A stretch of DNA of 64,000 nt from Macrostomum lignano (lineage: Eukaryota). Below are positions 31,186-58,796 of the stretch, piece by piece. The notes under the pieces were generated by a model that did no database searches, had not been told where the DNA came from, and saw nothing but the letters and a program-made list of their open reading frames with translations. Every line of letters starts with the position of its first letter. The stretch's first letter is position 1. The stretch covers positions 124,001-188,000 of the forward strand of contig NIVC01001486.1 in the NCBI GenBank assembly GCA_002269645.1. The letters run 5' to 3'. A program made the position numbers and the translations under genes.

Positions 31186-31421
31186 TCAGCCTCGAACAAA
31201 GTACACTCCATCGGTGCTGCTCAGGTTGGCAGGCGGGTAGGCGAACCTCAGCAGGTGGCACAGGCGCTGCTGGCCAGAGAAAATCACAGCCTGGCAGTCG
31301 GGGTTGGCCTCGCACAGAGTCACGCAGCCAACATCGGCTGCTGCTGCTCGACTCCAGTAGGTCAGCCAGGTCGCTTCCACCGTCAGGGCCGGCATGGCAG
31401 CCCTTCTGAAGCAGGTTTTGT
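31186..31421 (-). CDS. WSC-PAN gene A, exon 2 (PAN/apple-like domain)
   Basis: TTTCGCAG acceptor, phase 1; CVTLCEANPDCQAVIFSGQQRLCHLL; TGA at 31186-88. Confidence 0.82.
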
Positions 31422-32405
31422 CTGCGAAATTCGGTTGAAGCATTGTTGAATTACATGTGCGAGATGCTGCATGACCGTTAGACAGGCTAATTGAAGTCCT
31501 GCAGTGACTACTAACTGCAGTTATACTTAATTGTAGGATGCTGGTTGCCAGATTTTCTATTTTGTAGGTCACTTCCAAATTGTAAATTTGAAGAAGGTAA
31601 TGGTACTTACATACAGAAAGAAGATAAATGAAATCAGATTAGCAATAATTCATTGGATAGAAACTACGTAATTAAGATCAAAGGGTGATTACTTTTGTTG
31701 GTTAAACGTTAATCCCTTTCAAAACTTGCAAAAGGAAACAAAATCACCAAGCTAACAAGGAACGAGAAGTATGTATAATAATCTACTAAAACGAGGAGAA
31801 TGTCTATGCTCGCTTCGCTCGCATTTTTTCCTTTGGTACTTTCTGTTGCCTCGGAGATTCTGCATAGACATTCTCCTCGTTTCAGTTGGTTATTGAAGTG
31901 TAATTCCACGAATGCAAGGAACGGAGAATATATTGACTAGATTCGCGGAGATAATGAGTATTCTCCGCCCCCTGTATTCGCAGGACACGTTTTGTCTATG
32001 GTAGAAGAAAGTGTTCAATCAACCTCACTCTGGCTCACGGCCTTAACTTTATTGTCTATGGCAGCGGAGGTTACTTAGTGAGAATCTCCGCTAGCAAAGC
32101 ACTAACGACATAGACAAGGCGTACAGGCAAAGTGGGATACATACGTACCATGAATACACTAGACTCGATACCATACCACTGAGCAGCTCACATCTGATAC
32201 TTGCACCAAAGTGTTCAATTCTGTGTGATTCTCTCCCACCTATCCCCAAGGCACAGAGTACGTGTATACATAGAGCTGAAGATTAATTAGAAAGAGCATG
32301 AGGCCTGCTGTGCACTCTGTACATGTCTTCTGCATGCGAGTGCTCAGGAGTGAATAGAATAGCCATTCGAGCTAGCCTCATCGCCAGCTGCAAGTCGGCA
32401 CTCAC

Positions 32406-32802
32406 TCGGGTAGGTCAGCGCAAACACGGAGTTCTTGTACGCGTCTCCGCATGTCTGAGAGCCGTTTCCCCGGCAAGCGGTGCTGCACTCGCTCTCCGCA
32501 GCAGTTCCGTGCGATCCGTAGGACTTGCCACAGAAGCACTGACGGCCCACCTGGACACCGAAGTACGGAAAACCGCCCAGAGAGCAGACGCTGCTGCACA
32601 GCTCGTGACTCTGCTGGCTGGTCTTCACTCCGGTCGTGACGCTGAACTCACCGATTCTACTCACGCCATCCAGTCCGTTCAAGTCCCTGACCGAGTTGTC
32701 CTTGTAGCAGCCGACATAGGAGAACTGGACCTCTCTGGTAGACACGCTGGCTGCCAGAACAGCCAGGATGCAGGATGCTTGGATGGACACTAGCCCAAGC
32801 AT
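32406..32802 (-). CDS. WSC-PAN gene A, exon 1 (signal peptide + WSC domain); 210 aa total
   Basis: Hydrophobic leader; YVGCYKD..RDL...C...C...YFGVQ.GRQCFCG...C...C.G...CG...NSVF with 8 Cys; A|GTGAGT donor; 397+236 = 633 nt. Confidence 0.88.
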
Positions 32803-34343
32803 TGCAAGCTTGGAATTGACGGAAACTCTTTAGGCAGCTCCCTTTTAAACAAATAATTTTTGTCTGCTCGCGGTAGTTTTATGCAAGACACTGCTGCTGA
32901 ATTGTGCAAACTAAAAGTAAATGCCATCTATACTACTGAGAAAAAAGTAGATTCCTCCGTTATCGGTTTGCTTTACTCTGTAAATTAGTCACAATTATTC
33001 ATCTGTTTGTTTCTCTACTTTGAGATGTGGATGAGGCCAAGTTTGACCCAGAAAAGATATGCTGTGAGAAGCCCCAAACTACTGGAGCAGCCCCCTAGGA
33101 GATTTGTTCAAGCAGGTTCTGAAGGTCTTTGTATTGAGTCAGTCACATTAAGAGCTGGCTTGAATGCCTGCTTGTAACAACCTATCTGAAAGTACATGTG
33201 GGGGAGTTTAATAAATAAGAGTTACCATCTGAGATTGCTTTAAAATATCGTATTATTTCCGGTTATCTCAGAAAATTATTGCAAATTTTATGAATTTTAG
33301 CTAGAGAATTCAACAAAGCATAGCCATCCCCAGTTGCGACGACAGCCTCCCAAGGAGTTCTGTAAAATCTGCCATTTTTGAATGAAAAATGTCCTATAAA
33401 TATCCCCTTCAAAGCCAAATAGATTGAAACAATAGTTAGACTGTGCAATGTAATTCATTCAAAAAGCGGCAAAGTTTTTTTCTATCATATGCTGAATTTT
33501 TTAAAGATAAACTAAACATGCAATGGTGCAGTGTTAAACAAATAATGCACACTGAAGATAGGTCAAAGCAAACACTGAGGGAGTTTTGACTCAAGTCACC
33601 CCGTAGTCATAGTAACAGAGGCCTTCACTTTGGTTGTCTTTCGCGCTAAAATATTAGATAATGAAATATCTACATGGACCGAGCGCGTGCCGACATACAT
33701 GTAGTAGATGTCAACCAAAAGCTAGAAAGGTGCAGGCCGTTACTATAAAGTGATGCCTCTTTGGTAAAACAAGCATTTTTAGTGTTGCTCCTGGTGCTCT
33801 GTGATCGGTGGTTGGAATCGATGTGTCTTCTAGGAGTATAGTTTATAACAAAAAATGGGTTGGCGCTTTGTATCTTATTGTTGAATACGCGACCGGTGAG
33901 ACACCGGATGACTTACTTTGAGTAGTAAGAACTACAGTTAGTTTAACTTTCTCTCTTCTAATCTACACTACTTTACCTGACTCATTTGGGGAGGATTTCG
34001 CCTTGTGAAAAACATTTTAAAGCTTATCCTTGAAGCATTGGTTTTTTGTAGAAAAATCTGGGAGCATGTGTCTCGCAGCACTTTTTCCCAGACATTTTTT
34101 GCGTTGCTGCTGGTGAATTCACCAGTGACGGCTTGAGATTTTTCTGAGTTTTTGCAGACGCATAGAGTTAGCTCGTAATAGGCTTTAGAATTTTTCAAGT
34201 TTTTCTGCTCAGTGAAGAATCTGCCACTCTACTGTCTACTCTGCAATGTGGATAGCGCCAAGGATACTCAAAAGAGGTGGTGTAGTGGGAATCACAATGG
34301 TACTCATGCTGACAAGCGCTCGCTTCCATCGATCGGCACCCAA

Positions 34344-34345
<2 letters not shown>

Positions 34346-34434
<89 letters not shown>
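34346..34434. repeat. (CT)n microsatellite in duplicated flanking module
   Basis: Direct reading; paralogous tracts at ~55146-55295 and ~56311-56376 share flanks. Confidence 0.97.
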
Positions 34435-34437
<3 letters not shown>

Positions 34438-35106
34438 CTGTGGCTCCTTACCTCAGTTCATTGATGTTGAGAAGTCTACAGATGTCTTGAACAGCTACCC
34501 TGTTGGACAGTCGACATGCAGAATATGCGGTTCTGAGAAAAACAAAAACTCTAGCTAATCACCAAATAAGCTTTCTTGCCAACTTGATGGATAGCTAAAC
34601 GTTAAACCAAAGTGCAGGTATGCATGCCTAAGAGCTTGTAGAAGGTGGCAACAGGTGCGCATTTCCATGAAAAATCTCTTAAGAAAAAATTACAAGGTAA
34701 GGATTGTAGAATACTTTTTAAGTCATGACAAAATTTATTTAATTTTATCAAGAATTTTTGTTTTAAAGATTAGGTCTGCAGGAATATATCTGTATTAGCC
34801 ATTCATTAAAGCTGTTTCATCATTTAACATCAATTAAACAAGTGGCGTACGAGACCGATAACCAAATCACTTCTGACAAGTTGCTGTACTGGTTTAACCA
34901 CGTGTTTGCCTATGCGTCCCAAACTGGTGGTCAGCTAGGCAAACATTTGTTATTCAAGATAGCTATATGAATATTTAAACATGAAGCAGAACCAATATGA
35001 ATCACTTCTGCTTTAAAATTACGTCAGGATTATCAAGCAGAATTCTATTCAGTGTTTTTTATTAGATCAAACAGATGATCGCGGCTTCATCCAGACCCAC
35101 TCAGCC

Positions 35107-35351
35107 TTACAGCTTCATCCAGACCCACTCAGTCTCGCTGGCCACCTCAGCGGGCACAGCGGCGAATCTCAGCAGGCGGCACATGCGGCTCGAAGGCACG
35201 AAGGCGCAGGCCTGACAGTCTGGGCTTCGCTGGCAGGCGGCAGCGCACTGGATGGGGCTCTTGGCAGAGACGCTGCTGTGAGTGACGGAGCTCGCGGAGG
35301 CTGTGATGTTCGGCAGAGACGTCACGGGCAGTTTCGGCATCACCGGATCGA
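35107..35351 (-). CDS. WSC-PAN gene B, exon 2 (PAN/apple-like domain)
   Basis: CCTTCTGCAG|TC acceptor, phase 1; QCAAACQRSPDCQACAFVPSSRMCRLL; TAA at 35107-09. Confidence 0.85.
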
Positions 35352-35548
35352 CTGCAGAAGGGTTGGTTGGAAATATATATTTTCTGAAATACTGTTGTCA
35401 GCCAGCTATATTGTAATATTACTGGTAAAATCGCCCTTGCAGTTCAAACTACCTTCAAAGATGACTTGAGAACACAACGTTTTTAAGTGGTCCTCATCTA
35501 AATTAACCTGTGTTTACGCTTATATGAGCTGTTAATCAGAACGCTTAC

Positions 35549-35978
35549 TTGGTGAGTAAGTCAATTCGTACATAGAATTTCTAAATCCTCCACCGCAAAT
35601 CTGAGCCGAGTTTCCGCTGCAAGCTGAGCTGCAATTGCCAGCCGGTGCGATGCCGTGCGATCCGTAGGCCGAGCCGCAGCAGCAGAAGCTGTGGTGCTGA
35701 ACTCCAAAGTAGCGAAATCGACCGTAAGAGCACATCTGGCTGCACAGTTGCAGTGTCATCTTGGTGCCATCATAAAAAAATGCTGGGACACTGGGGTGAG
35801 TCTCAAACTGTCCGAACTTTTTGACTCCCTCCAGTCCTACAAGATCTCGGTTGCCATCAGCGCCATCCACGTAGCAGCCGAGGTGGCGAAACTCCAACGG
35901 TTGAGGTGGCACCGAAGCAGCGGCGAAGCGTCCGGAACCGGCTGCCCAGCAGAGCAGCAGAGCGCAGAGTTTCAGCAT
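35549..35978 (-). CDS. WSC-PAN gene B, exon 1 (signal peptide + WSC); 224 aa total
   Basis: MLKLCALLLCWAAG leader; LGCYVD..RDL...MTLQLCSQMC...YFGVQ...CCCG...CGG..RNSMY; A|GTAAGC donor; 430+245 = 675 nt. Confidence 0.88.
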
Positions 35979-36072
35979 TGGGAAAAAAACTAGAGAGTGA
36001 CCGAACTGCAGCTTCTGAGACGCTTCTTCTGATTCAGGTAAGAAATTCAAACATTATATTTTCTGGTAGAAG

Positions 36073-36107
36073 CCAATGGAGATCCACCAACGCTGTGCAA
36101 GGATTGG
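36073..36107 (-). promoter_or_regulatory. Paired opposed CCAAT boxes upstream of type-2 WSC-PAN genes
   Basis: AGCCAATG and GATTGGCT conserved 95-130 bp upstream of the ATG in B, C (37283, 37318) and G (58890, 58925); ATTGG also upstream of D (46864, 46878). Function inferred. Confidence 0.45.
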
Positions 36108-36207
36108 CTGAGGTTTCACCCTAATAGGAAAAAGGGATCGATCACTGATGAGTAGCAAGACAGGAATGGATCTGACATCTCTGATACTGTGTTCAAAAAG
36201 TTCAAAA

Positions 36208-36219: not shown

Positions 36220-36276
<57 letters not shown>
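36208..36276. repeat. (GATA)n microsatellite at the B/C tandem junction
   Basis: Direct reading; lies between the upstream region of B and the 3' end of C. Confidence 0.95.
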
Positions 36277-36334
36277 CCTCACAGCTTCATCCTGACCCAC
36301 TCAGCCTCACAGCTTCATCCAGACCTACCCAGCC

Positions 36335-37188
36335 TCACAGCTTCATCAAGACCCACTCAACCTCGCTGGCCACCTCAGCGGGCACAGCGGCGAATCTCAG
36401 CAGGTGGCACATGCGGCTCGAAGGCACGAAGGCGCAGCCCTGACAGTCCGGGCTTTGCTGGCAGGCGGCAGCGCACTGGATGGCGCTCTTGGCAGAGACG
36501 CTGCGGTGAGTGACGGAGCTCGTGGAGGCTGTGATGTTCGGCAGAGACGTCACGGGCAGCTTCGGCATCACCGGATCGACTACAGAAGGGTTGGTTAAAA
36601 GTATTGTAATCATTAATATTTTAATCGGTCAGATATTTTATTATATCGCTTGCACAATGGCCCAGTCTGAACCACATTCAAGGACGACTTTAGAACATAT
36701 GCAGCGTTTTAGGTCGTCTGGCTAAGTGAGACTCTCTTTACACTTCTACGAGCTGCGTTAATTCGCAACGCTTACTTGGTGAATAAGTCAACTCGTAGAT
36801 CGAATTTCTCAACTCTTCACCGCAAATCTGAGACGAGGTTCCACTGCAAGCTCTGCTGCAGTCGCCAGCCGGTGTGATGCCGTGCGATCCGTAGGCCGAG
36901 CCGCAGCACCAGTAGCTGTGGTGCCGAATTTCAAAGTAGCGAAATCGGCTAAAATTTTTGCACTAACTTTTAATATACAACAGTCTTTTTAGCGGTTGTG
37001 AAGTTTCGCAGTTATGAAGTTTCTCGGTTGTGAAAGTAGATGACATTTAGCGGTTGTGAATATTCGCGTTTGTGAAAGCAACCCCAGCCGAGGTGGCGAA
37101 ACTCCAACGGTTGACGCGGCACTGCAGCAGCGACGCAGCATCCGGAACCGGCTGCCCAGCAGAGCAGCAAAGCGCAGAGTTTCAGCAT
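36335..37188 (-). pseudogene. WSC-PAN copy C: intact PAN exon (36335-36579), WSC exon (36776-37188) disrupted
   Basis: About 152 bp of exon 1 (relative to G) is replaced by 135 bp (36950-37084) matching one arm of the 29051 foldback element. Confidence 0.88.
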
Positions 37189-37344
37189 TGGGAAAAAGTT
37201 CAGAGAGTGATGGACCTGCAGTTTCTGAGACGCTTCTTCTGATTCAGGTAAAAAAGTTAAGCACTATATTTGCTAGAAGAAGCCAATGGTAAAATGGACC
37301 ACCAATGCTGTGCATGGATTGGCTGAGGTTTCACCTTGATGTGC

Positions 37345-37924
37345 ATGAGCGGTCCCACAGAGTTTAGAGTCGAGCAGAGGAAGCAAGACTCGGCCGGGAG
37401 CAAAGTATCCATAATGTGCTCGCAGCAGCAGCTCATTTAATTAGACTTGCCGGGACCCTCTAACGTTACAATGGTGACGATGTTGCGAGATCTGTTGGCC
37501 CCAAAAAAGCCGAAGGAGACCTCTTGACATCATCAAGACTCTCCGGGAGCACTTTAACCCCAAACTCTGGAAGGTGGTGAAGAAGGTTCAATTTCTACCG
37601 ACGCAGTCAGCACGAGAGCGAGAGCATCAGCAGTTATCTGGAACAACTGAGAAAATATATTCCTGGATGAAGCACTGAGGGACAAGCTGTTGACTGGACT
37701 CCGTAATTTGCAGATTCAGAGACGCCTGCTCCAGACGACTCTCCGAGCAGCATCCACAAGATTGCGGTCATCTTTGAGACAGCGGAGAGAGGAACAGACG
37801 TCATCAGCAAGGCAGGATTACCAAGTCACGACGTCAAGCATGTGAAGGCAGCCGACACACGGAATCCTCGTGATCGGGCCTGCTTCCTTTGCGGCTCCCA
37901 GTCTCACTGGGCGGCAAAGTGTCC
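37345..37924 (+). mobile_element. Decayed Gypsy gag fragment
   Basis: Frameshifted LRDLLAPKKP, FYRRSQHESESISSYLEQLRK, ALRDKLLTGLRN and zinc knuckle CFLCGSQSHWAAKC. Confidence 0.75.
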
Positions 37925-38762
37925 CATGACATAAGCATACATGTAAGCGCGCAGGCCATTCTTACGGCTGAGACATAAGCGCGGGGGCCATTCTTACGGC
38001 TGAGACATAAGCGCGCAGGCCCTTTTTAAGACTATCCGGCACAAAGTTAGGAAGCTTTATTTTCTCTATAATTATTTTTCACAAAGTTAAATTTTTAGAC
38101 TTAGAATGTTAAAATGTTTAGATTCAAAATGTTAAAATGTTGCGATTAAAAATAGCAAAATGTTCAGTAGCTAAGAATAGAACCATATGTTATGCAAGTC
38201 TGGGGCCGGGTTTTGATGGTTGTCGCTGGCTGCAGCTGGTAGCACAATTCCGGCTGCAGCTGATGTTTTGGCTCACTCACCCAGCGAGAACGCACTGACT
38301 TGATGGGAGAGCTGAATACACCTGTGTCTTATTATTCTAACTTCAAGCTGCAGCATTCAGATTGATGCGTCTAGAATGCGCGCTTGTGCCAGACTCATGC
38401 ATTTAAGATACGCGCTTGTGCCAGACTTATGCATTTAAGATGCGCGCTTGTGCCAGACTCATGCATTTAAGATGCGCGCTTGTGCCAGACTCATGCATTT
38501 AAGATGCGCGCTTGTGCCAGACTCATGCATTTAAGATGCGCGCTTGTGCCAGACTCATGCATTTAAGATACGCGCTTGTGCCAGACTTATGCATTTAAGA
38601 TGCGCGCTTGTGCCAGACTCATGCATTTAAGATGCGCGCTTGTGCCAGACTCATGCATTTAAGATGCGCGCTTGTGCCAGACTCATGCATTTAAGATGCG
38701 CGCTTGTGCCGGTGCGCGCTTGTGTCACTGAGAGCAGTTAAAAAGTGCGCGCTTATGTCATG
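37925..38762. mobile_element. TIR element with internal 32-bp repeat arrays
   Basis: CATGACATAAGC / GCTTATGTCATG termini; ~10 copies of GCGCGCTTGTGCCAGACTCATGCATTTAAGAT at 38378-38710; 2-3 copies of a different 32-mer with the inverted core near the left end. Confidence 0.7.
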
Positions 38763-42500: not shown

Positions 42501-43069
42501 GTAGCCCATTTATTTGCGCGTGTTTTTTACTTCTGTGTAAAACCAAAGTATATTTTTTCGTAATTAGTACATTAACACTATCTTGAATTTGATCCATTCG
42601 GTCTGTAATAACTTTAGATGTCAGTAAGAATCTACAGAACTTACAACCAATATTAAACCCAATATCTACAGAACTTCATACCCAACTTTGCGTCCCCCTT
42701 GGCAGGTGCACACAGTATGCATGAGCACTGCGGCGACACGGCAGCCCCAGCAGTATGAGCAACCCTAGCAGGTAAGCAGGCAGCGCGCCTACACATTCGT
42801 GTCGTTTTTTCGTTCTCTGATTATGAGTACATTTTTATTTTGCTTACTAGATTAAATTTTGTCTATCTTCAGCCGCTCTGGGTATTACTAGTACAAGCTA
42901 CAAGTGCAAAATAATATGTAGTTTAAAAACCTAATATATTGCTTACTTAGCTCTAAAATCCGAATTTCGAAGTAGAAAGTGAATAATATTAGTCTTGTCA
43001 GTGTCACAAATATCTTCATTTCCCTGCCAGATGCCCTGCGTTGCCTACTGTGCATTGGTGCTCAGCCTT

Positions 43070-43253
43070 GGGTGCCCAGCTGCCTTCGGTGCCCAGCTGC
43101 CTTCGGTGCCCAGCTGCCTTCGGTGCCCAGCTGCCTTTGGTGCCCAGCTGCCTTCGGTGCCCAGCTGCCTTCGGTGCCCAGCTGCCTTCGGTGCCCAGCT
43201 GCCTTTGGTGCCCAGCTGCCTTCGGTGCCCAGCTGCCTTCGGTGCCCAGCTGC
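43070..43253. repeat. 17-bp minisatellite, ~11 copies
   Basis: Unit GGTGCCCAGCTGCCTTC; units 4 and 8 carry a C>T variant. Confidence 0.95.
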
Positions 43254-46058: not shown

Positions 46059-46294
46059 TCAGCCACGAACAAAGTACACCCCATCGATGCTGCTCAGGTT
46101 GGCAGGCGGATAGGCGAACCTCAGCAGGTGGCACAGGCGCTGCTGGCCAGAGAAAATCACAGCCTGGCAGTCGGCTGAGGCCTCACACAGCATCACGCAG
46201 GTGACATCGATTCCGGCAGGGCGGGTCCAGTGGATCCGTCGCGAGGCAGTCACTGTCAGGGTTGGCCTATCAGTCTGTTGAAAACATTTGCTAG
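46059..46294 (-). CDS. WSC-PAN gene D, exon 2 (PAN/apple-like domain)
   Basis: CACTTTCAG|CT acceptor, phase 1; TSKCFQQ...CVMLCEASADCQAVIFSGQQRLCHLL; TGA at 46059-61. Confidence 0.82.
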
Positions 46295-46388
46295 CTGAAA
46301 GTGCGAAATCAAATCAGAGAATTTAGGGAAAATCCCCGCTTTGATTCATTGGTCGCTAACAGTTTGCACTTTTAGTATTAACACTCAC

Positions 46389-46791
46389 TCGGGTAGGTCA
46401 AAGCGAAAACAGAGTTTTTGTAACTGCCTCCACACTTTTGACTGGAGTTTCCAGAGCACGCAGTGTTGCAGAGGCTGTCAGCGACTGATCCGACTGAGCC
46501 ATAGGATGAGCCGCAGTAGCAGTACCGTTGGTGCTGCACCCCGAAAAACAGGAATCCGCCCAACGAGCAAATGCTACCGCACATTTCGTGGGTCATCCCG
46601 CTGTTACGGATGGCCGAATATACTATGTTCCCGTACCCACCAACGTTTGTGACATCCGCAAATCCGTTCAAGTCTCTGTTGCTTCCTTCGTCTTGAAAAC
46701 AGCCAACGTAAGAGAACTGGATCACCCTGCCAGCGGCGAGGACCCAGAAGGTGCACATAGCGACCAGAACGATTGACTGTCTGTAGAACAT
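46389..46791 (-). CDS. WSC-PAN gene D, exon 1 (signal peptide + WSC); 212 aa total
   Basis: MFYRQSIVLVAMCTFWVLAAG leader; YVGCFQD..RDL...MTHEMCGSIC...FFGVQ...CYCG...CGGSYKNSVF; A|GTGAGT donor; 403+236 = 639 nt. Confidence 0.88.
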
Positions 46792-49535
46792 GTTTAAAGT
46801 TGTATATCCGGGCCGCTTTCTTCTGCTCCCTCGAGGAGTTTGCAAAGCTTCATATAGTTTTGCATTGGGCTACTCTGATTGGTTATTTGCAGATCTACAT
46901 GTATCACTGCACTTTGAGCTAAGATCCGTGTAGATAACTGATATGCTACTTTAAGTACAAACTGTGCGTTTGAACTCTAAGTAACCAAAAAGCTCGATAC
47001 ACGAGCTTTCAAACAGGCAGCAAAGAACGGAATCACCTGTCAACGACGCTGGGCAAAAGAGCCAGGCCGAGATCAAAGAGATCGTATGTTAAAAAAGCAT
47101 TTTTTTATTTTGCTCTAAGCCCTGAATCCCGTTCATGTCTCGCTGCAGCCTAGCACTAGCCCAAAGCCTCCGCTCCTCGTCTCCCAGGTTCTTCCATGTA
47201 CAGTTGAGAGGAGAGAAGCTTCAATAGACGAAATGGGAACAGAGCCATGTGTGAACTCTGGGAGCAGTGTGGAGCGAGGCGGAGAGTCACAGAGAAGGCA
47301 GAACCTCCACACCCATTCTATGCTAGAAGGTTAATATTATCGATTGAATTTTGCCTCGCTGAGCGGTCGATGCAGCTCCTTGCTCAGGCGCCTGTCTATC
47401 AGTGAGCGCCTGACATTACTACTGTTTAGGATGGCAGTGTGTCGATGCCAAAGATACACCTAAATCAGGATTTTAGTTTATTGGTGCCCGCTGGCATAAA
47501 AAGCGCAGAGCAAGCCACTAAAGTATCAAAACTTTTATACACATGCAAGCTTGTAAGGCATTGTACTTTTCACGTACTTGATCGATGTGGAGTCAAATGC
47601 TCCGAGCAGCCGAATTTCGTAGCCTCTTTTTAGACTACAGATTACCATGCAGTCTCACGCAAAATTTTGGACACACACGAATTTATCACCATTGAATTGA
47701 AAATGGAAGACAGTCCTCTGGACCAGTCTCTTGCATTTAGAGTGGAACAACTTGAACAAGCTGACCATTATCTTCTCATGAGGTGGAACAGATTCTATTG
47801 GATGAGCTTGGAGGAGACTGATTCAAGATGATGACGGATAAAGCGATCGATTGAGGGATGTTGACGAGCGCACCAGCGATCAAGAGAAAAAAAGTCGACT
47901 GGGGCATGAGCGTCTTCTTTACTGCCTGACACGAAGTCAAGAAAACAGCTTTGGACTCTTGGAGATGCGTCTAGTCTGATGGTAATCAAGGACAATGACA
48001 AAATGGCGAGGTTATGAAAGCAAACTATTTCATGGCCTATTCTCTGACAATTAAATTTTATATTTCTTGGCACTTTCTTGGTCAGAGCCACTAGGTGTAT
48101 AAGCGATGTATGAGCAACAACAAAAGGCTACCGATATTTTGCAGACAGAAAGGGGTGGAAAAGGAAAATAATGGAAATCCAGATCGTTAGAACTTGCAAG
48201 TAATACAGTCAACATCGTTTCCTGCTGTGCAGGTTTTGAAGGTCCTCTGTATTGAGCCAATCGAAATAAGACACTGGCAACACTGGATAAGCTGGTTTGA
48301 GCAGTAAAAACCAACGCAAGACTAACCTGTCTTTTCTGAACCACACTACTTTATCTGACTCATTCGAGGTGAATATTGCATTCTGAAATACATTTCGAAA
48401 CTTTTCTAAATCTAAGAGTGTTGGATCTTGTGTGCGGGGAATTCCGTGTAGTATTTATTGCTCACGATTTTCACTCTGTGCGCGTGCTCATCGTGTATTG
48501 CTTGCGCTCCTTGCACCTCTCTGCTCTATCGTAACTTTAACGTACCCTGTTGGCGCTTTTGCCCTTGGGTTTGCAGTGGCTGCAATTGGACTTTGCCTAT
48601 AATAAATCGTCGACACGTTGTTTGTCAGTGCACTTGGCACTTTTCATCTCGCCTCGCATGCTCTTTGCTCTTGGCTTGCTTCTTTGACAGCGAGTTTTTA
48701 GAGAAAGCTGGGAGCATGTGTCTCACAGCTTGGTTTTTTTCCACCCTGTTTCTACCTTCCTGCATCCTGGTGGAAACGCCCGGAGACGGCTTGAATTTCT
48801 TCTCAGTTTTTTGCATGCACTCCCAAGAGACTTCAGTGAATTGCTACAGTTTTTCTGCTCAGCAACGTATCTGCTACAAATGAGAGTAGCTCGTAGGTTG
48901 CCTTCGGTTTCCGCTCCATAAATTCACTGGCACCAGTCAGATGTCTAGCCTCCCAGTTTCCTGAACTTCAATGGTAGCAAATTCAGATATCAGTGAATTC
49001 ATTCAGATATCAGTGAATTCATTCTATTGACTGAATGATTTTTTACCAGCGTTGTTTTAAGATAACGTTAACGTTGACTGATTCTACTGCTGTCAGAAAT
49101 TTCAGTCACAGCTCTGGGTCTCTTACGGTATCTGTTATCTATAATATTCCCAGCTGTCTTTCTGTCTACTCTGCGATGTGGATAACGTTAAGGTTGACTC
49201 AGGAGAGGTAATTTATTGAGAACCACAAAATTTGTACTTGAGCCTCTCATGCTGACAAAAGTCCGCTTCCCTCCATCGGCACCTAAACAAATCTATTTTC
49301 TTTCTCTCTCTTTCACCAGACAGCTTTTAAACAAACTCCTGAGATACAATCACCATCGGGCTGTCATCAGTTGACACATCGGGCCCGTGGCTCTCTTCAA
49401 CTACGCTCGTAGCTGCACGATCACTGGATCTGGCCTGACGTTTCGTCCTGCATTGGCGTCCGATGAACACCGGTGAAATCAACTCTGTCCTGGTCCAGGT
49501 GTCTCAGAACGGCTCTCAATTTGTCGACTCTTGGG

Positions 49536-49624
49536 GGCAGAGACGCTGCTGTGGGTGATGGAGCTCATTGAAGCTGAGATGCTCGGCATGGCAGAAGCTG
49601 GTAGCTTGGTCATTGCTTGGCCAG
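49536..49624 (-). pseudogene. Orphan truncated type-2 PAN exon (copy E)
   Basis: TTTTGTAG acceptor then GQAMTKLPASAMPSISASMSSITHSSVSA, homologous to VMPKLPVTSLPNITASASSVTHSSVSA; breaks before the cysteines; no WSC exon seen upstream. Confidence 0.7.
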
Positions 49625-50817
49625 CTACAAAAGTTGAATTAAAACTGAATTTAGGAAAAAATTACCCAAAAAGTAGAAATAATATATTTAGGAGCGTATT
49701 TATATAGGCAAATCTCTGTGAATTATGCAATCTGTATTTTCACAGTGTGCATTTGCAGCAGAGTTTTAAAAAAAACATTTTAGAATTAGTTAAGTTGTCA
49801 CTGGTATTTCCATCGATGCAAGTTTGGATAGTTTTTCAAAAACATTGAAACCCGGAATACAGTCGCAACAAAGAATTGCCATATGTAAAGATCGCCAATG
49901 AATATCAGTGAAGAAAATAATTATTAGCACTCATTTTTAAAGACATCAAAAATATAGTAGGAAAGCGTCTACTTAAAGTGTTTTCTATCTGAAATTTTTA
50001 TTCTATCTGAGGTGTACAGCTAACCATAATTAATTTACAGGTATTTAAATCTACACAACCATTCGTCCGCTAGTGTTGCAATATATGCTGGCTATTAGGG
50101 TTGAAAATCACGCGTGAGAGTCGCAGAGAAGGCAGAACCTTCAAACCCGGTCTGAAGTTCTTGCTTGTTCTGGAAGTTCAACAGTTCGTATGGATTCCGC
50201 CTCGCTGAGCAGTCGATGCAGCTCCTCGCTCAGACTCAGACACGCCACTCTCAACTCGGGGTGTTACAGAGTGTTGGTGCCTGTTAGACACGCCACTCTC
50301 AACTTGGGGTGTTACGGAGTGTTGGTGCCCGCTGGAAGAGCAATCACAGATCAAGCAACTTAAGTACCATAAAATTGATATTTATGCAAGCTTGTAAAGC
50401 ATGGTAATTTACACGTACTTTATCGGTGTCAAATTCTTCTAGCAGTTAAATTTTACGGACGCAGGCACCATTTTCTTTAGAGTACAACCAGCATTTTCAA
50501 CAAAATTGACAGCAACCCCCACAAGGCTGCTAACAGATTACCAGTGTCTTGATTCTGAAGATCGAGCTTCATGTATCTTTTGGACTTGCTACTAAAGCGC
50601 AAGGCCACACAAGGCTAAAGATTTAATTTTAAGTCTGACGAAAATATATTCTTATTTTTACTTCACGCCAAAATTTATTTACCGCTACTTGAAAGTAGGC
50701 GAAAAAGCTAATGATTTCATTTTCTAAACGGGACGGCTTAAACGCCTTCGAATCAGTTTCTCCGTCTTGTGTAGATCAGAGGTTTGGATTGCGCTTGATT
50801 TACAAGTTCAACAGCAG

Positions 50818-51341
50818 GGACAGATGGGCGGGCACCCAAAACTGCCGACAATCTGATCGTGCCACGGTTCCGTGCCCCTCTCGCAGGCTCAGTAATGTCC
50901 TTCTGAACCAAAATCGGAAGGAAATCCGAGCCCTCGTCATGACCTTCACCGGCCATGGCTACCTCGCCAGGCACTGCTTCCTCCGAGGTGACCTCGAAAG
51001 TGAACTTTGCCCTTTTTGCGAGTACGATAATGAAGATGCTCAGCACTTTGTTTGTCACTGCCCTTTCTTTACCAGAGACCGGCTACGCTACCTCGGGCCG
51101 AACCCGTCCATTGACGAGGTCTGCCAGCCTGACAGCATCCCACGGCTCATCCAGTTCCTTCGGGCGACGAGACGAGCCACTTTCTTCCCCACGGAAGATC
51201 ACGCTGCAGGACGGACCGGCGGACCACCCTGACCGGCCCCACGCCTCTGCCTGTCTGCAGGCCTTCAGGGGCTAGCGGAATGGGCGACCCTCGCCTCCCC
51301 GCTGTATCTACGGACCACCCTGCAGCTAAGTCAAGTAAGTC
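50818..51341 (+). mobile_element. 5'-truncated LOA/I-group LINE 3' end
   Basis: TFTGHGYLARHCFLRGDLESELCPFCEYDNEDAQHFVCHCPFF; tail GCTAAGTCAAGTAAGTC. Confidence 0.88.
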
Positions 51342-53207: not shown

Positions 53208-53712
53208 TTAAAGTACTAGCTTCATCCAGAACCACTCATCCTCGCTGGCCACCTCAGCGGGCACAGCGGCGAACCTCAGCAGGCGGCACATGCGGCTCGA
53301 AGGCACGAAGGCGCAGCCCTGACAGTCCGGGCTTCGCTGGAAGGCAGAGACGCTGCGGTGAGTGACGGAGCTCGCGGAGGCTGTGATGTTCGGCAGAGAC
53401 GTCACGGGCAGTTTCGGCATCACCGGATCGACTGCAGAAGGGTTGGTTACAAAAATTGTTTTGAAATAGAATATTTATAATTTTAATCGCTCAGATAACT
53501 ACTTTAAAGCACGAATGAAGCACGCAGCGTTTTAAGGTCGTACTTGGCTAAATTAACCTGTGTTTTAACGATCTGCGTTAATCCGGAACGCTTACTTTGT
53601 GAGTAAGTCAGTTCGTAGATGGAGTTTCTCGAGACTCCACCGCAAATCTGAGACGAGTTTCCGCTGCAAGCCAAGCTGCAGTGGCCAGCCGGTGCGGTGC
53701 CGTGCGATCCGT
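53208..53712 (-). pseudogene. WSC-PAN copy F: PAN exon with 27-nt deletion (53208-53431); only the 3' end of the WSC exon left (53596-53712)
   Basis: SVSAFQRSPDC versus SVSAKSPIQCAAACQRSPDC in B; WSC remnant GSHGTAPAGHCSLACSGNSSQICGGVSRNSIY abuts a satellite array. Confidence 0.88.
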
Positions 53713-54344
53713 GGCTTATCAAGTGCAATAATCCTTGGCTTATCAAGTTCAATAATCCTTGGCTTATCAAGTGCAACAATCCTTGGCTTATCAAGTGCAA
53801 TAATCCTTGGCTTATCAAGTGCAATAATCCTTGGCTTATCAAGTGCAATAATCCTTGGCTTATCAAATGCAATAATCCGTCGCTTATCAAGTGCAATAAT
53901 CCTTGGCTTATCAAGTGCAATAATTCTTGGCTTATCAAGTGCAATAATACTTGGCTTATCAAGTGCAATAATCCTTGGCTTATCTAGTGCAATAATCCTT
54001 GGCTTATCAAGTGCAATAATCCTTGGCTTATCAAATGCAATAATCCTTGGCTTATCAAGTGCAATAATCCTTGGCTTATCAAGTGCAATTATTCTTGGCT
54101 TATCAAGTGCAATAATCCTTGGCTTATCAAGTGCAATAATCCTTGGCTTATCAAGTGCAATAATCCTTGGCTTATCAAGTGCAATAATTCTTGGATTATC
54201 TAGTGCAATAATCATTGGCTTATCAAGTGCAATAATCCTTGGCTTATCAAGTGCAATAATCCTTGGCTTATCAAGTGCAATAATCCTTGGCTTATCAAGT
54301 GCAACAATCCTTGGCTTATCAAGTGCAATAATCCTTGGCTTATC
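53713..54344. repeat. 24-bp minisatellite, ~26 copies
   Basis: Unit GGCTTATCAAGTGCAATAATCCTT with scattered point variants; no spacers. Confidence 0.97.
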
Positions 54345-55166
54345 CTTGGAAAAACATTTCTGATCGAATGGTGCAAGTTCGAAGAAAATCGGTTGAGCAG
54401 TTTTTTCTCTAACCGATCACATACCTTCCTACCTACCTAGATACCGGGTCGACAGACCATTTTTAGTATATGGTGCTGGAGGCATTCACTCTGCCAGCGA
54501 CGCAGACTAGGAAGGGTGCAGACGTCACTAAAGTGATGATGCCTGTTTGGTAAATAATTTTAAGTGTTCTTTCTCGGTGCTCAGTGATCGGTGATTGTTC
54601 AATGAATCGATGTGTCTTGTACGTCGTATAGTTTAAAGCAAAGAGTGTATTGGCGGTTTGTATTTTCTTGTTGAATGCGCAACCGGTGGGACACCGGATG
54701 AGCTACAATACTTTTAGTAGTAGAACCTACAGTACTCGTAGTTTAACTTGTCTTTTCTCATTAACACTAATGTACCTGACTCATCTGGGAAGAATTTCGC
54801 ATTCTGAGAAAAAAATTGAAGCTTTTCTATGATGCATGGGTTTTTTAGAAAAATCTGGGAGCATGTGTCTCGCAGCGCTGTTTTTCCTAGCGACTGTTTC
54901 TGCGTTCCTGCAGGTGAAATCACCCGTGACGGCTTGAGCTTCTTCTCGGTTGTTTTGCATACGCCTAAAAGAGCCTTTACAATTTTTTCAGTTTTTTCTG
55001 CTCAGCAAGGAAACTTTTACTTTACAGTCTACTTTGCAATGTGGATAGCGCCAAGGATACTCAAAAGAGGTGTAGTGAGAATCACAATGGTAGTTGAGCC
55101 TCTGATGCTGACAAGCGCTCGCTTCCATCGATCGGAACCCAAACCTCTCTCTCTCTCTCTTTCTCT

Positions 55167-55209
<43 letters not shown>

Positions 55210-55238
55210 CCCTCTCTCTGTCTTGCTCTCTCTCTCTT

Positions 55239-55290
<52 letters not shown>

Positions 55291-55499
55291 TCTCTTTGGC
55301 TTCTTACCTCTGCCCATTGGTGTCGAGAAGTCTACGGATGTCTTGAAGAGTTACCCTATTAGACTGCCAGAATATGCGGTGCCGAGAAAAGGAAAAAACT
55401 CTTTAGCCAATGTCCAAATAACCTTTCATGTCAACTAAATAGCTAAAAAAAGCTGAGGGATGCAAAAAGGAGAGGTAAAATATGACATAGGTCAAATAT

Positions 55500-56300
55500 T
55501 AACAGGAGAGTTGCTACTTCGGGGTCAGCGCACTTCCTAACCCCAACCACTCGATTGCAAACTCTGTCACCATTGGTATTGAACAAGTTCTAAATAACAA
55601 AAAAATCGAACTAAGGGAAGAAATCTGGATTAAAAAACTGGGGACTGACAAACCGCCGGGTACGAACATCAGGGTCGACAATCATCTTCTCCGACCCATC
55701 CCACTGGTCCTTCCTTTCCACCCATCTACGGTCTGGCTCGCCAACGAGATTGCTAAAAACTTTGATAAACTGCAACACAAACCAGGTCCCGCATTCTGCC
55801 CGCTTTTACACGGCAACGAAATTTACAGAGCCTCCTGGCTCCCAATAAGTTTCAGTCTCAGCCAGGAAACCACTGAATCATGCTAACCAATGCGCTCATT
55901 TTACCTATAGAACTACAATATTTATTCACTTTGTCATTTATTTTATTTAAACGTCTTGATCGTACTTGCAAATATCGATTTTTAGGCTCCCATTATCAAT
56001 GCATGCATTGCATTTAATCGCACTTCGAAAAAAGCAGTTTTTTAATGTACTAAATATACAGTCGATGAAAATGACTGCATGGTTTAAAGCCTCTGGGAAA
56101 AGGTAGATATAGACAGAACTAGACAGAAATGTACTCGTACATCTCTCATATGTACAGCTGCATGCTGATTTATTTTATCAGACTGACAAAAATAATACTT
56201 AAAAGTCAAACTTGAACTGCATTACACATAGATTTTTGGCCTGATGAAGAGCCCAGAGGCTTGAAACCGGTAGCCTATATCGCTCATACTAAATTTTTAA
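55500..56300 (+). mobile_element. Penelope-like element relic (GIY-YIG C-terminal half + 3' region)
   Basis: AHFL..(shift)NHSIANSVTIGIEQV...LREEIWIKKLGTDKPPGTNIRVD resembles the PLE endonuclease end (H, E-x-x-WI, G-x-N); followed by a hammerhead motif. Confidence 0.7.
56238..56275 (+). ncRNA. Minimal type-I hammerhead ribozyme motif
   Basis: GGC-CTGATGA-A-GAGCC-CAGA-GGCTT-GAA-ACCGGT-A-GCC: full catalytic core, 5-bp stem II, palindromic stem III, GUA site, 3-bp stem I. Confidence 0.75.
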
Positions 56301-56336
56301 CACGCCGTGACCTCTCTCTCTCTCTCTCTCTCTCTC

Positions 56337-56379
<43 letters not shown>

Positions 56380-57368
56380 CTTTTTACCTCTGCCCATTGA
56401 TGTTGAGAGCCGTAAAGAGCTACCCTATTAGACTGCCAGAATATGCGGTGCCGAGAAAAGGAAAAACTCTTTAGCCAATCTCCAAATAACCTTTTTTGTC
56501 AATTAAAATAGCTAAAACAAGCCTCGGGGATGCAAAGAGCTAGAAGGTAAACACAGGTTTGCATTTCCGTAAAAAACAATCCAGTGACATTTGGTTCTTG
56601 TGTAAATTCAAGAAAACCCTCTTTCTATTCTATAACCTAAATTGTCTGATCAACACAATGGTGGATTATCAGTGAACTGATTTTGTTTTTTGCTGCAAGC
56701 GCCACCATTTTGGGAAGTTCATTCACAAATTGTCAAAATTCGCTTCGCAAAAAGCCACTTTTCACGCAATTGAAAGCGACTCTGTTTTCTTTAAACTTCG
56801 AATCAGAGCGCAGTCGCCACTAAAAAGCGGTTTTCGCCATGGCCTGCCGGAATACATTTTCCAATTCAGACAATGTAGCCTATAGAAAAAGAGTTTAGTT
56901 CAACTGAATTGCCGCACAAAACGAACCGTGCATTCCAAAGGATTGTCTGAATGGAGCTTCTTCTAGTTCCAACAGAACATTATAACAATAGAACATGGTC
57001 TAGCCATTAATAAAGGTCAACTAGTAACGAGAGACGTAAACCATAACGCAAATCTCGCATACTCTCTCTGTCAGGGAAATCAGCAAAATAGAAAAATTAA
57101 GGGCGACTTCACCGAAATTTATACCGATAGCCAGAGCAAAATGAAAAAAAGTTAATTTTTAAGGTTACACAGAATTTAGATTTTATTCTTACTATTCAAA
57201 ACAAAACTATGGGGTCAACACCAAAATTTATTCAGGACTGGTAGAAGAGAAACAAAATTTTAGATTTAGTAGCAATGCTCTTTAAGGGTTCAATGTATCG
57301 ATTTCGATAACGCTTGTTGTAGTTCGCCTCCGTATACATTAGTTTCAAACTCCTTGACACACTCTGAA

Positions 57369-57616
57369 TCACAGCTTCATCCAGACCCAATCAGCCTCAC
57401 AGCTTCATCCAGACCCACTCAGCCTCACAGCTTCATCCAGACCCACTCAGCCTCACAGCTTCATCCAGAACCACTCAGCCTCACAGCCTCATCCAGACCC
57501 ACTCAGCCTCAAAGCCTCATCCAGACCCACTCAGCCTCACAGCTTCATCCAGACTCACTCAGCCTCACAGCTTCATCCAGACCTACCCAGCCTCACAGCT
57601 TCATCAAGACCCACTC
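57369..57616. repeat. 28-bp VNTR derived from the stop-codon region of gene G, ~9 copies
   Basis: Unit CAGCCTCACAGCTTCATCCAGACCCACT; the rightmost copy is the coding end EWVLMKL*. Confidence 0.92.
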
Positions 57617-57837
57617 AACCTCGCTGGCCACCTCAGCGGGCACAGCGGCGAATCTCAGCAGGCGGCACAGTCGGCTCGAAGGCACGAAGGCGCAGCCCTG
57701 ACAGTCCGGGCTTCGCTGGCAGGCGGCAGCGCACTGGATGGCGCTCTTGGCATAGACGCTGCTGTGGGTGACGGAGCTCGCGGAGGCTGTGATGTTCGGC
57801 AGAGACGTCACGGGCAGTTTCGGCATCATTGGATCGA
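57593..57837 (-). CDS. WSC-PAN gene G, exon 2 (PAN/apple-like domain)
   Basis: CCTTATGCAG|TC acceptor, phase 1; QCAAACQRSPDCQGCAFVPSSRLCRLL; TGA at 57593-95. Confidence 0.85.
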
Positions 57838-57880
57838 CTGCATAAGGGTTAGTTACAAAAAATTGTTTTGAAATAGAATA

Positions 57881-58247
57881 TGTGGTGAGTAGCGTAGCTT
57901 CTCTGAGTTAGCGAACATGTCGGGGAGGGGCCGCCCCGGGCCTGTGTGGGCTCTCCGTTGTGCGTGCTCTGTCTGGCGGGGGGGGTGGGTGCTTGAGTCC
58001 CACCATCACGGCACTTGGGGGTTTTTTAGGCCGCGTGGGGCTGCTCTGGCCCAGCTACCCTGTCTCGCGTTTGCAAGCTAATTTTTTTATTCCATTTTAT
58101 TTTCCCCCTTTAAAGCCACATTTGTCTTTTAATTGCTTTCGAACCGAGCTCACTAAAATATATTCGACCAATCACAAGGGCCTGCCGGGTTCGTCGTCGT
58201 CGCCCGTGTCGTGCCTTTGCCTTCCTTCCTCGGCGTCGAGGAATTAA
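57881..58247. mobile_element. 367-bp GC-rich insertion in gene G intron
   Basis: Absent at the homologous position of the F intron (GAATA|TTTATAATTTT). Starts TGTGGTGAG; ends with hairpin TCCTCG-GCGT-CGAGGA. Confidence 0.65.
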
Positions 58248-58366
58248 TTATAATTTTAATCGCTCAGATAACTACTTTAAAGTACGAATGAAGCACGCGG
58301 CGTTTTTACGTCGAACTAACTAAAAAAATTGTGTTTTAACGATCTGCGTTAATTCGGAACGCTTAC

Positions 58367-58796
58367 TTGGTGAGTAAGTCAATTCGTAGATAGAATTTCT
58401 GTAAGCTCCACCGCAAATCTGAGACGAGTTTCCGCTGCAAGCTGAGCTGCATTTGCCAGCCGATGCGATGCCGTGCGATCCGTAGGCCGAGCCGCAGCAG
58501 CAGAAGCCCGCAGACTGAACTCCAAAGTAGCGAAATCGGCCGTAAGAGCACATCTGGCTGCACAGTTGCGGTGTCATCTTGGCGAAGTCAAAAGCGAATG
58601 CTGGGTTAGTAGGGTGAGTCTCAAACTGTCTGAACTTTATGACCCCCTGCAGTCCTACAAGATCTCGGTTGCCAACAGCGCCATCCACGTAGCAGCCGAG
58701 GTGGCGAAACTCCAACGGTTGAGGCGGCACCGAAGCAGCGGCGAAGCGTCCGGAACCGGCTGCCCAGCAGAGCAGCAAAGCGCAGAGTTTCAGCAT
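58367..58796 (-). CDS. WSC-PAN gene G, exon 1 (signal peptide + WSC); 224 aa total
   Basis: Colinear with B exon 1 (430 nt), open frame, A|GTAAGC donor. Confidence 0.88.

What the first reader, a model, noticed from the sequence alone, without database searches (positions are those of the whole stretch)
31186..58796. Tandem cluster of small secreted WSC + PAN/apple two-domain genes undergoing birth and death
Seen: seven same-strand homologues over 28 kb (A, B, D, G intact; C, F disrupted; E orphan exon). Intact copies share signal peptide + 8-Cys WSC exon, a phase-1 intron at the same YPS/YSPS position, and a PAN-like exon, with no TM segment (210-224 aa). Two subfamilies: A/D and B/C/F/G/E. 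Known: WSC domains are associated with glycan (e.g. beta-glucan) binding; PAN/apple domains bind glycans or proteins. Inference: a minimal bivalent soluble recognition or cross-linking protein family (immune, mucus or adhesive). I do not recall this architecture being described as a clustered family.
Basis: partly seen in the sequence, partly recalled or inferred. Interest (0 to 1): 0.85.

Follow-up and report, generated by a model that had tools for sequence, protein, structure and literature searches.

The report
Flatworm tandem WSC+PAN secreted-protein gene cluster
This stretch of the flatworm Macrostomum lignano genome holds a real tandem cluster of small secreted two-domain sugar-binding-type genes (four intact, two broken, one scrap), part of a large, uncharacterised family seen so far only in this genus, whose relatives are flagged as testis and germline expressed rather than immune or adhesive.

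Summary
Seven same-strand (minus) homologues lie between 31186 and 58796. A, B, D and G are intact. C and F are disrupted. E is a weak fragment. Intact copies encode 210-224 aa: an N-terminal signal-like hydrophobic segment, an 8-Cys WSC domain, a phase-1 intron after LTYP/LTYSP, and a 4-Cys PAN core, with no later TM-like stretch.

The window is Macrostomum lignano: copy B matches UniProt A0A1I8GZN4 apart from one stretch that model skips. NCBI models of three paralogues carry the same phase-1 intron. Every single-unit WSC+PAN protein whose source I looked up is from M. lignano. Other M. lignano contigs also carry tandem or mixed clusters.

No paper found characterises this family. Three A/D-type paralogues sit in orthogroup OG0000005 of Brand et al. 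2020: 92 genes, 3 Macrostomum species, annotated "Testis" and "germline_FACS". None of 74 prostate seminal-fluid primer pairs maps here.

The best reading is a genus-restricted, birth-and-death family of secreted lectin-like proteins with male-germline-biased expression. The function is inferred, not shown, and the immune/mucus/adhesive guess has no support.

One curiosity is unexplained. The last 42 codons of A/D-type genes keep 87-93% nucleotide identity (dS 0.18 for A versus D) while the rest of the gene is saturated.

The parts
31186..32802 (-). Copy A, intact, A/D subfamily. Exon 1 is 32406-32802 (signal-like segment plus WSC). The intron is 31422-32405 (984 nt, phase 1). Exon 2 is 31186-31421 (PAN core plus stop). 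Product 210 aa.
   Evidence: The acceptor was chosen by homology with D and with the NCBI paralogue models. An upstream alternative acceptor at 31515 would give 241 aa.
35107..35978 (-). Copy B, intact, B/G subfamily. Exon 1 is 35549-35978, the intron is 35352-35548 (197 nt, phase 1), and exon 2 is 35107-35351. Product 224 aa.
   Evidence: The protein matches UniProt A0A1I8GZN4 (P0018) residue for residue, apart from one stretch that model skips.
36335..37188 (-). Copy C, pseudogene. The ATG and signal-peptide piece is 37069-37188. The middle of the WSC exon is replaced by about 170 nt with stop codons. The WSC 3' piece is 36771-36956, with substitutions at otherwise invariant positions. The PAN exon, 36335-36579, is still open.
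   Evidence: Splicing around the replaced segment is out of frame (my reading of the sequence).
46059..46791 (-). Copy D, intact, A/D subfamily. Exon 1 is 46389-46791, the intron is 46295-46388 (94 nt, phase 1), and exon 2 is 46059-46294. Product 212 aa.
49518..49643 (-). Element E, a 32-37 codon relic of the start of a B/G-type PAN exon. No WSC exon and no PAN core accompany it.
   Evidence: tblastn gives 53% identity over 32 aa with E = 9e-6. The family HMM gives E = 0.019. Weak.
53208..53716 (-). Copy F, pseudogene. Only the last 40 or so codons of the WSC exon survive (53596-53716). The PAN exon (53208-53431) has a 27-nt deletion that removes 2 of the 4 core Cys.
53707..54344 (.). A 24-bp x 26.6 satellite that replaces the 5' two-thirds of F's WSC exon.
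57593..58796 (-). Copy G, intact, B/G subfamily. Exon 1 is 58367-58796, the intron is 57838-58366 (529 nt, phase 1), and exon 2 is 57593-57837. Product 224 aa.
58797..58982 (-). Upstream block of about 185 nt, conserved among G, B (35979-36160) and C (37189-37349). It is a putative 5'UTR and promoter of the B/G subfamily.
   Evidence: blastn gives 88-89% identity running past the ATG. Function is inferred only.
57369..57622 (.). A 28-bp minisatellite (9 copies) directly after G's stop codon. Its unit repeats the last 7 codons plus the stop. The same repeat follows C (36275-36364, 3.2 copies), and B has about 2 copies.

Best explanation
The region is a tandem, same-orientation cluster of a Macrostomum-restricted multigene family. 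Each gene has two exons and encodes a secreted protein of about 210-224 aa.

Exon 1 gives the signal peptide and an 8-Cys WSC domain, a fold used elsewhere for glycan binding. Exon 2 gives a short variable linker and a trimmed PAN module. That module has 4 core Cys and lacks the outer apple disulfide. It ends in a very conserved tail.

The cluster evolves by duplication, divergence and decay. It holds two old subfamilies, young duplicates such as B and G, two pseudogenes made by sequence replacement or satellite invasion, and one relic.

My inference is that the proteins are made mainly in the male germline. I infer that they act outside the cell as lectin-like recognition or coating proteins on sperm or in the ejaculate. 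In this reading the variable WSC loop and PAN N-part supply specificity, and the constant C-terminal PAN half docks to a shared partner.

Shown: the gene anatomy, the domains, the family size and restriction, clustering on other contigs, and the pseudogenisation. Inferred: secretion, glycan binding, testis expression of these particular copies, and the reproductive role.
For: - Anatomy and domains.
- WSC fold: the AF2 model has pLDDT 76-91 in the WSC part. It matches Wsc1 7pz2 (E = 4e-7) and Kremen 5fws. A sequence profile matches Kremen1 at E = 1e-11.
- PAN fold: the model of B's PAN exon alone has core pLDDT 82-91. Its listed matches are almost all PAN-fold proteins: plasminogen, the HGF N domain, Sarcocystis lectin SML-2 (rmsd 0.9 A over 39 residues, 31% identity), Eimeria PAN, FXI and MIC4. 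Probabilities are about 0.9-1.0 for the top 30.
- Species: B matches A0A1I8GZN4 of M. lignano.
- Gene models: NCBI models P0003, P0004 and P0005 have the same phase-1 intron after LTYP, 69-93 nt long.
- Restriction and size: both word-based searches returned only M. lignano proteins. An exhaustive HMMER profile search of 1.84 billion representatives found single-unit full-length matches in at least 10 clusters at 50% identity. All five of those whose source I looked up are M. lignano.
- Clustering elsewhere: L001 has two tandem genes. L002 has four units plus a fragment, of both subfamilies and on both strands. The long model P0033 is a run-on of tandem units, each with its own signal-like segment.
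- Constraint and turnover: A versus D gives omega 0.28. B versus G gives dN 0.068, dS 0.097, omega 0.70.
- Expression lead: Mlig012529.g1, Mlig011376.g1 and Mlig003596.g1 (P0005, P0004, P0007) all fall in OG0000005 of Brand et al. 2020 (PMC7336406). That orthogroup has 92 genes from M. hystrix, M. lignano and M. spirale. It is annotated positional = Testis and germline_FACS, with mean protein divergence 0.92.
Against: - The expression evidence is at orthogroup level. Members carry the labels 'Non-Specific|Other|Testes', so only some are testis-region specific. There is no in situ annotation.
- It concerns A/D-type paralogues on other contigs, not the window copies.
- I could not place any B/G-type gene in an orthogroup, because the stored table is truncated.
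- A 'testis region' fragment also contains other tissues.
- Secretion rests on a hydrophobicity profile, not on SignalP.
- No binding data exist for any member.
- PAN_1 is below Pfam's cut-off in A and D.
Confidence: 0.5

Rival explanations
1. These are somatic soluble lectins for immunity, mucus or adhesion. In that view they are secreted by epidermal, gut or gland cells and bind microbial or mucus glycans with two binding domains.
For: The architecture is signal peptide plus two carbohydrate- or protein-binding folds. Tandem expansion with fast turnover is also typical of immune lectins. Some members of OG0000005 are labelled 'Non-Specific'.
Against: No expression or functional evidence points to immune, mucus or adhesive tissue. 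The only region-specific label in the orthogroup is Testes, and an independent germline_FACS label agrees with it. The orthogroup carries no Tail label, and the adhesive organs are in the tail.
Confidence: 0.2
2. These are prostate-gland seminal fluid proteins, like the many WSC-domain 'Mlig-pro' candidates of M. lignano. They would be transferred at mating and act on the partner.
For: [quoted passage not shown] 2018 have WSC-type BLAST hits, and two hit an oyster 'Plasminogen' entry. Mlig-pro46 affects sperm competitive ability. Several Mlig-pro genes map to multi-copy loci.
Against: None of 18 RNAi primer pairs maps to the window, L001 or L002 at up to 3 mismatches. None of 56 prostate ISH primer pairs does so at up to 4 mismatches, apart from one lone 4-mismatch hit, and none encodes a 6-aa word of any family protein held at that point. 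The orthogroup holding the paralogues is labelled Testis, not Tail, which is the region that contains the prostate.
Confidence: 0.15
3. The copies are decaying or non-functional duplicates, carried along by repeats, with no current role.
For: Three of the seven elements are broken. The region is rich in satellites, a Helitron and retroelement fragments. Omega for B versus G is 0.70.
Against: All 12 Cys and many Gly and aromatic positions are invariant across 18 paralogues of 29-59% identity. A versus D gives omega 0.28 with saturated dS. The reading frames and splice sites of A, B, D and G are intact. Paralogues have annotated gene models with the same splice junction.
Confidence: 0.05

Closest known systems
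Macrostomum lignano prostate-limited WSC-domain seminal fluid candidates (Mlig-pro series; Weber et al. 2018, Patlar et al. 2019)
   Same: They come from the same species. They are small, mostly secreted WSC-domain proteins encoded at multi-copy loci, and they are reproduction-related and fast-evolving.
   Different: None of their probes or RNAi primers maps to this family. The orthogroup holding this family's paralogues is labelled testis and germline, not tail or prostate. The papers do not describe a C-terminal PAN module for those transcripts.
Kremen1/2 WSC domain and yeast Wsc1 sensor domain
   Same: These are the best structural and sequence matches for exon 1, sharing the 8-Cys WSC fold.
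   Different: Kremen is Kringle-WSC-CUB with a TM segment and acts as a Dkk/LRP6 co-receptor. Wsc1 is a membrane-anchored cell-wall sensor. The proteins here have no Kringle, CUB or TM.
PAN-module lectins and ligands: Sarcocystis SML-2, Toxoplasma MIC4 apple domains, the HGF and plasminogen N-terminal PAN domains
   Same: They share the helix plus beta-sheet core with the C-x3-C-x5-C-x11-C pattern. SML-2 superposes at 0.9 A over 39 residues. SML-2 is a galactose-binding lectin, according to the title of PDB entry 2yio listed.
   Different: The module here is trimmed. It lacks the outer disulfide of apple domains, and about 55 residues are well modelled. Sequence similarity is marginal: Pfam bits are 17-26, and the PDB profile E-value is about 0.4.
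Fungal copper radical oxidases with an N-terminal WSC or PAN module
   Same: Both domain types turn up as accessory modules on secreted enzymes. The full-length model hit the Fusarium glyoxal oxidase 9n3u, and the PAN-exon model hit the Colletotrichum copper oxidases 6ryx and 6ryv.
   Different: Here the two modules occur together and without any catalytic domain.

Membership tests
WSC domain (Pfam PF01822) | Profile score above the curated cut-off | tested here: met
   The scores are 44.6-52.8 bits against a cut-off of 27.8 in A, B, D and G.
WSC domain (Pfam PF01822) | Eight conserved cysteines | tested here: met
   C31, C71, C75, C91, C93, C108, C112 and C120 are invariant in 18 family members.
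WSC domain (Pfam PF01822) | WSC fold | tested here: met
   The AF2 model has pLDDT 76-91 in this part. Foldseek matches Wsc1 7pz2 at E = 4e-7 and Kremen 5fws at E = 1e-6.
WSC domain (Pfam PF01822) | Carbohydrate binding | not testable with these tools
   This needs recombinant protein and a glycan array.
PAN module (Pfam PF00024 PAN_1) | Profile score above the curated cut-off | tested here: inconclusive
   B scores 25.8 and G 26.4 bits, above the cut-off of 21.4. A scores 19.5 and D 17.2, below it.
PAN module (Pfam PF00024 PAN_1) | Core cysteine pattern and helix/beta-sheet fold | tested here: met
   C-x3-C-x5-C-x11-C is invariant. The domain-only AF2 model has core pLDDT 82-91, and almost all of its 50 listed Foldseek matches are PAN-fold structures.
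Apple domain in the strict sense (FXI/prekallikrein type) | A third, outer disulfide linking the first and last Cys of the module | tested here: not met
   Only 4 Cys are conserved in exon 2, and there is no terminal Cys pair. It should be called a trimmed PAN module, not an apple domain.
Kremen family | Kringle plus WSC plus CUB ectodomain with a TM anchor | tested here: not met
   There are no Kringle or CUB hits and no TM-like segment.
M. lignano prostate-limited SFP candidates (Mlig-pro1-76) | Identity with a transcript shown by ISH to be prostate-limited | tested here: not met
   None of 18 RNAi plus 56 ISH primer pairs maps to the window, L001 or L002. None of the 56 ISH pairs encodes a 6-aa word of the family proteins held at that point.
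Testis-region / germline orthogroup OG0000005 (Brand et al. 2020) | Family members listed in the orthogroup | tested here: met
   Three of the ten NCBI-named paralogue IDs I queried were found in the stored, truncated table, and all three are in OG0000005. The other seven were not found in the stored text. The window copies themselves could not be looked up.
Birth-and-death multigene family | Tandem paralogues of different ages together with pseudogenes and fragments | tested here: met
   B versus G has dS 0.10 and A versus D has dS above 1. C and F are pseudogenes and E is a relic. A similar mixed cluster exists on L002.

The most novel reading that the evidence does not exclude
The family may be a 'variable head, constant tail' recognition repertoire of the male germline in a hermaphrodite.

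In this reading the diversified WSC loop and PAN N-part read variable glycans on the partner's tract, on eggs or on rival sperm. The last 42 or so codons would be held nearly constant even at synonymous sites, either by recurrent 3'-end gene conversion or by a sequence-level element shared across dispersed paralogues.

The locus would then be a compact model for concerted and diversifying evolution acting within one small gene.
Probability: 0.12. Interest if true: 0.7.

Novelty: new variant of a known kind. Interest (0 to 1): 0.42.

Why it matters
Macrostomum lignano is a laboratory model for sexual selection in hermaphrodites, and RNAi, in situ hybridisation and transgenesis are all available for it. 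This is a large, fast-turning-over family of secreted lectin-like proteins that appears restricted to the genus and has a male-germline signal. That makes it a concrete, testable candidate set for sperm-surface or ejaculate-partner recognition.

Such a set would be distinct from the prostate WSC proteins already under study. The mosaic within a single exon, hypervariable at the start and near-invariant in nucleotides at the end, is also a small, clean case for separating gene conversion from selection.

If expression turns out to be somatic, the family is simply one more lineage-specific lectin expansion.

Tried and rejected
1. **Link to known seminal-fluid transcripts.** I collected 18 RNAi primer pairs (PMC6953679 supplement) and 56 prostate ISH primer pairs (PMC7336406 Table S11). 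I searched all of them against the window, L001 and L002, and the 56 ISH pairs also as translated 6-mers against the family proteins held at that point. No match was found, apart from one lone 4-mismatch hit that I treat as chance.

2. **Gene IDs in paper full texts.** This search found nothing.

3. **Placing B/G-type and other subfamily genes in orthogroups.** The stored supplementary table is truncated and the IDs were not found.

4. **RNA structure in the conserved 3' end.** Five paralogues folded no better than shuffled controls (z from +0.3 to +1.0), and the predicted structures disagreed with each other. I rejected a stable RNA structure as the explanation.

5. **Codon bias as the cause of the low dS.** GC3 in the last 42 codons (0.67-0.81) is not clearly different from the rest of the gene. 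This does not explain it.

6. **Reading C's replaced segment as an extra intron.** The acceptor is good, but the donor is weak and the splice is out of frame (my reading). I rejected it.

7. **A search for a sperm or ejaculate proteome of Macrostomum.** Nothing relevant was found.

8. **Spliced window models as input for structure prediction and the deep search.** I used M. lignano paralogues plus single-exon translations from the window instead.


Full report
**What is there**

The genes are on the minus strand. tblastn with the translated exons and a family HMM run over all six frames of the window find seven elements and nothing else.

| Element | Coordinates | State |
|---|---|---|
| A | 31186-32802 | intact, 210 aa |
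| B | 35107-35978 | intact, 224 aa |
| C | 36335-37188 | disrupted |
| D | 46059-46791 | intact, 212 aa |
| E | 49518-49643 | relic |
| F | 53208-53716 | disrupted |
| G | 57593-58796 | intact, 224 aa |

I read the sequence of each copy and built spliced models. Each intact gene has two exons split by a phase-1 GT-AG intron right after LTYP (A, D) or LTYSP (B, G). Intron lengths are 984, 197, 94 and 529 nt.

For A, the acceptor homologous to D and to annotated paralogues gives 210 aa. An upstream alternative acceptor would give 241 aa.

The only strongly hydrophobic 19-residue window is N-terminal, and nothing TM-like follows it.

**Domains**

- Pfam finds WSC well above its cut-off in all four intact copies. 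PAN_1 is above its cut-off in B and G but below it in A and D.
- An alignment of 18 family members shows 8 invariant Cys in WSC and 4 in a C-x3-C-x5-C-x11-C core in exon 2.
- An AlphaFold2 model of paralogue P0002 has a confident WSC part. That part matches yeast Wsc1 and human Kremen. A sequence profile agrees, with Kremen1 at E = 1e-11.
- A model of B's PAN exon alone has core pLDDT 82-91. Its listed matches are almost all PAN-fold structures: plasminogen, the HGF N domain, Sarcocystis lectin SML-2 at 0.9 A over 39 residues, Eimeria PAN, FXI and MIC4.
- Exon 2 is therefore a trimmed PAN module. It lacks the outer disulfide, so 'apple domain' in the strict sense does not apply.

**Whose genome**

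Two word-based searches of 5.8 billion proteins returned only Macrostomum lignano entries. Copy B matches UniProt A0A1I8GZN4 residue for residue, apart from one stretch that model skips, and the model uses the same splice junction. The window is M. lignano.

Three NCBI models of paralogues (P0003, P0004, P0005) have a phase-1 intron of 69-93 nt at the same LTYP position. The NCBI annotation is transcriptome-guided as far as I recall; I did not check that here. The two-exon, roughly 210-aa gene is therefore not an artefact of my reading, and the exons do not belong to a larger gene.

**Size and spread of the family**

An exhaustive HMMER profile search of 1.84 billion representative proteins found many multi-WSC proteins. 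Single-unit matches that cover nearly the whole profile fall in at least 10 clusters at 50% identity. All five of those whose source I looked up are M. lignano.

The long model P0033 is a run-on of tandem units, each with its own signal-like segment. Two metagenome proteins combine several WSC domains with a PAN-like piece, so the pairing of folds is not unique, but the small two-domain protein is.

Brand et al. 2020 place three of the paralogues in an orthogroup that also holds M. hystrix and M. spirale transcripts but none from M. pusillum.

Other M. lignano contigs show the same genomic habit:
- L001 has two tandem genes.
- L002 has four units of both subfamilies plus a fragment within 20 kb.
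- L003 has a single gene beside a P450 gene.

**Birth and death**

- B and G are young duplicates: dS 0.10, dN 0.068, omega 0.70. A and D are old: dS above 1, omega 0.28.
- C lost about 55 codons of its WSC exon to an unrelated segment that contains stop codons.
- F lost its start and two-thirds of the WSC exon to a 24-bp satellite. It also carries a 27-nt deletion that removes two core Cys.
- E is a 32-37 codon relic.

**What it does**

No paper found characterises this architecture. Many prostate-limited seminal-fluid candidates of M. lignano are WSC proteins, so I tested that link directly. None of 74 primer pairs used for those transcripts maps to the window or to two paralogous loci. None of the 56 ISH pairs encodes a family peptide.

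The paralogues Mlig012529.g1, Mlig011376.g1 and Mlig003596.g1 all sit in OG0000005 of Brand et al. 2020. That orthogroup has 92 genes from 3 species. Its positional annotation is 'Testis', an independent dataset adds 'germline_FACS', there is no ISH annotation, and protein divergence is high.

This is orthogroup-level evidence from A/D-type paralogues only. Even so, it is the only expression evidence found, and it points to the male germline. It does not point to immune, mucus or adhesive tissue, nor to the tail, where the prostate and adhesive organs lie.

My best reading is therefore a secreted, lectin-like, male-germline-biased family involved in sperm or ejaculate recognition. The function part is inference.

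**An unexplained mosaic**

Across both subfamilies the most conserved block is not WSC. It is the C-terminal PAN half, at 0.5-0.9 bits of entropy per column. By comparison, a WSC loop reaches 2.0 bits and the linker and PAN N-part 1.6-1.8 bits.

Within the A/D type, the last 42 codons keep 87-93% nucleotide identity among five close paralogues in the window, L001 and L002. A sixth, more divergent copy on L002 keeps 66%. The 35 codons before them are only 52-62% identical between the window copies and the contig copies.

For A versus D, dS is 0.18 in the last 42 codons and 1.2-2.2 elsewhere. The similarity stops at the stop codon.

A stable RNA structure and codon bias do not explain this. Gene conversion limited to the 3' end, or some sequence-level constraint, remains open.

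The 3' end is also the seed of a 28-bp minisatellite after G, C and B.

**Verdict**

The structural interpretation is right. The functional guess is unsupported, and the available evidence points elsewhere.

The family is uncharacterised and appears restricted to the genus. It combines two well-known folds and behaves like other fast-evolving reproductive gene families. Interest is moderate.

Noticed in passing
window 14141-18799 (+): There is an uninterrupted 1552-aa ORF with Helitron_like_N (E = 1e-59), PIF1 helicase and Pif1 2B domains. It looks like an apparently intact Helitron Rep/helicase gene about 12 kb from the cluster.
   Followed up: partly
window 31186-31336 and 46059-46209; L001 and L002 paralogues: The last 42 codons of A/D-type genes are 87-93% identical in nucleotides among five paralogues whose remaining CDS is saturated. 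dS is 0.18 against more than 1 for A versus D. The similarity ends at the stop codon. No stable RNA fold and no codon-bias explanation was found.
   Followed up: partly
window 57369-57622, 36275-36364, about 35084-35130: A 28-bp minisatellite starts inside the last codons of G, C and B. Its unit repeats 'EWVxMKL' plus the stop codon, so the 3' end of the CDS has been tandemly reduplicated into the 3' flank.
   Followed up: partly
window 53707-54344: A 24-bp satellite of 26.6 copies at 94% match has replaced the 5' part of pseudogene F. It gives long spurious ORFs in several frames.
   Followed up: yes
window 21565-22374 (+) and 1749-2810 (-): Two likely host-gene exons lie upstream of the cluster. 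One is a KH-domain ORF (KHDC4/BBP-like) with a long Gly/Arg-rich tail. The other is an ORF with a CHDNT domain, as found in CHD3/4-type remodellers.
   Followed up: partly
window 27338-27820 (-), 50711-51232 (+), 59133-59699 (-), 30548-30916 (-): Short ORFs share a Cys/His-rich motif ('CPFC...FxCxC') and an ending '[14 protein letters not shown]'. They look like C-terminal remnants of a retroelement. Positions 59285-59400 and 27346-27462 are 92% identical. Pfam gave no hit at E < 0.01, so the class is only my reading.
   Followed up: partly
window 10001-12000: There is strong strand asymmetry (GC skew +0.49, AT skew +0.39). It coincides with long Ser/Leu/Pro-rich spurious ORFs on the minus strand, so this is a purine-rich low-complexity tract.
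   Followed up: no
window 38376-38710, 43065-43253, 60061-60387, 34346-34439, 55145-55295: The intergenic DNA holds further tandem arrays: 32-bp x 10.5, 17-bp x 11, 66-bp x 5 and long (CT)n tracts. The cluster sits in very repeat-rich sequence.
   Followed up: no
L002 (M. lignano NIVC01000622.1:106181-126893): A second mixed cluster holds four WSC+PAN units of both subfamilies on both strands, plus a fragment containing only the signal-peptide region. One unit has its WSC and PAN exons 6 kb apart.
   Followed up: partly
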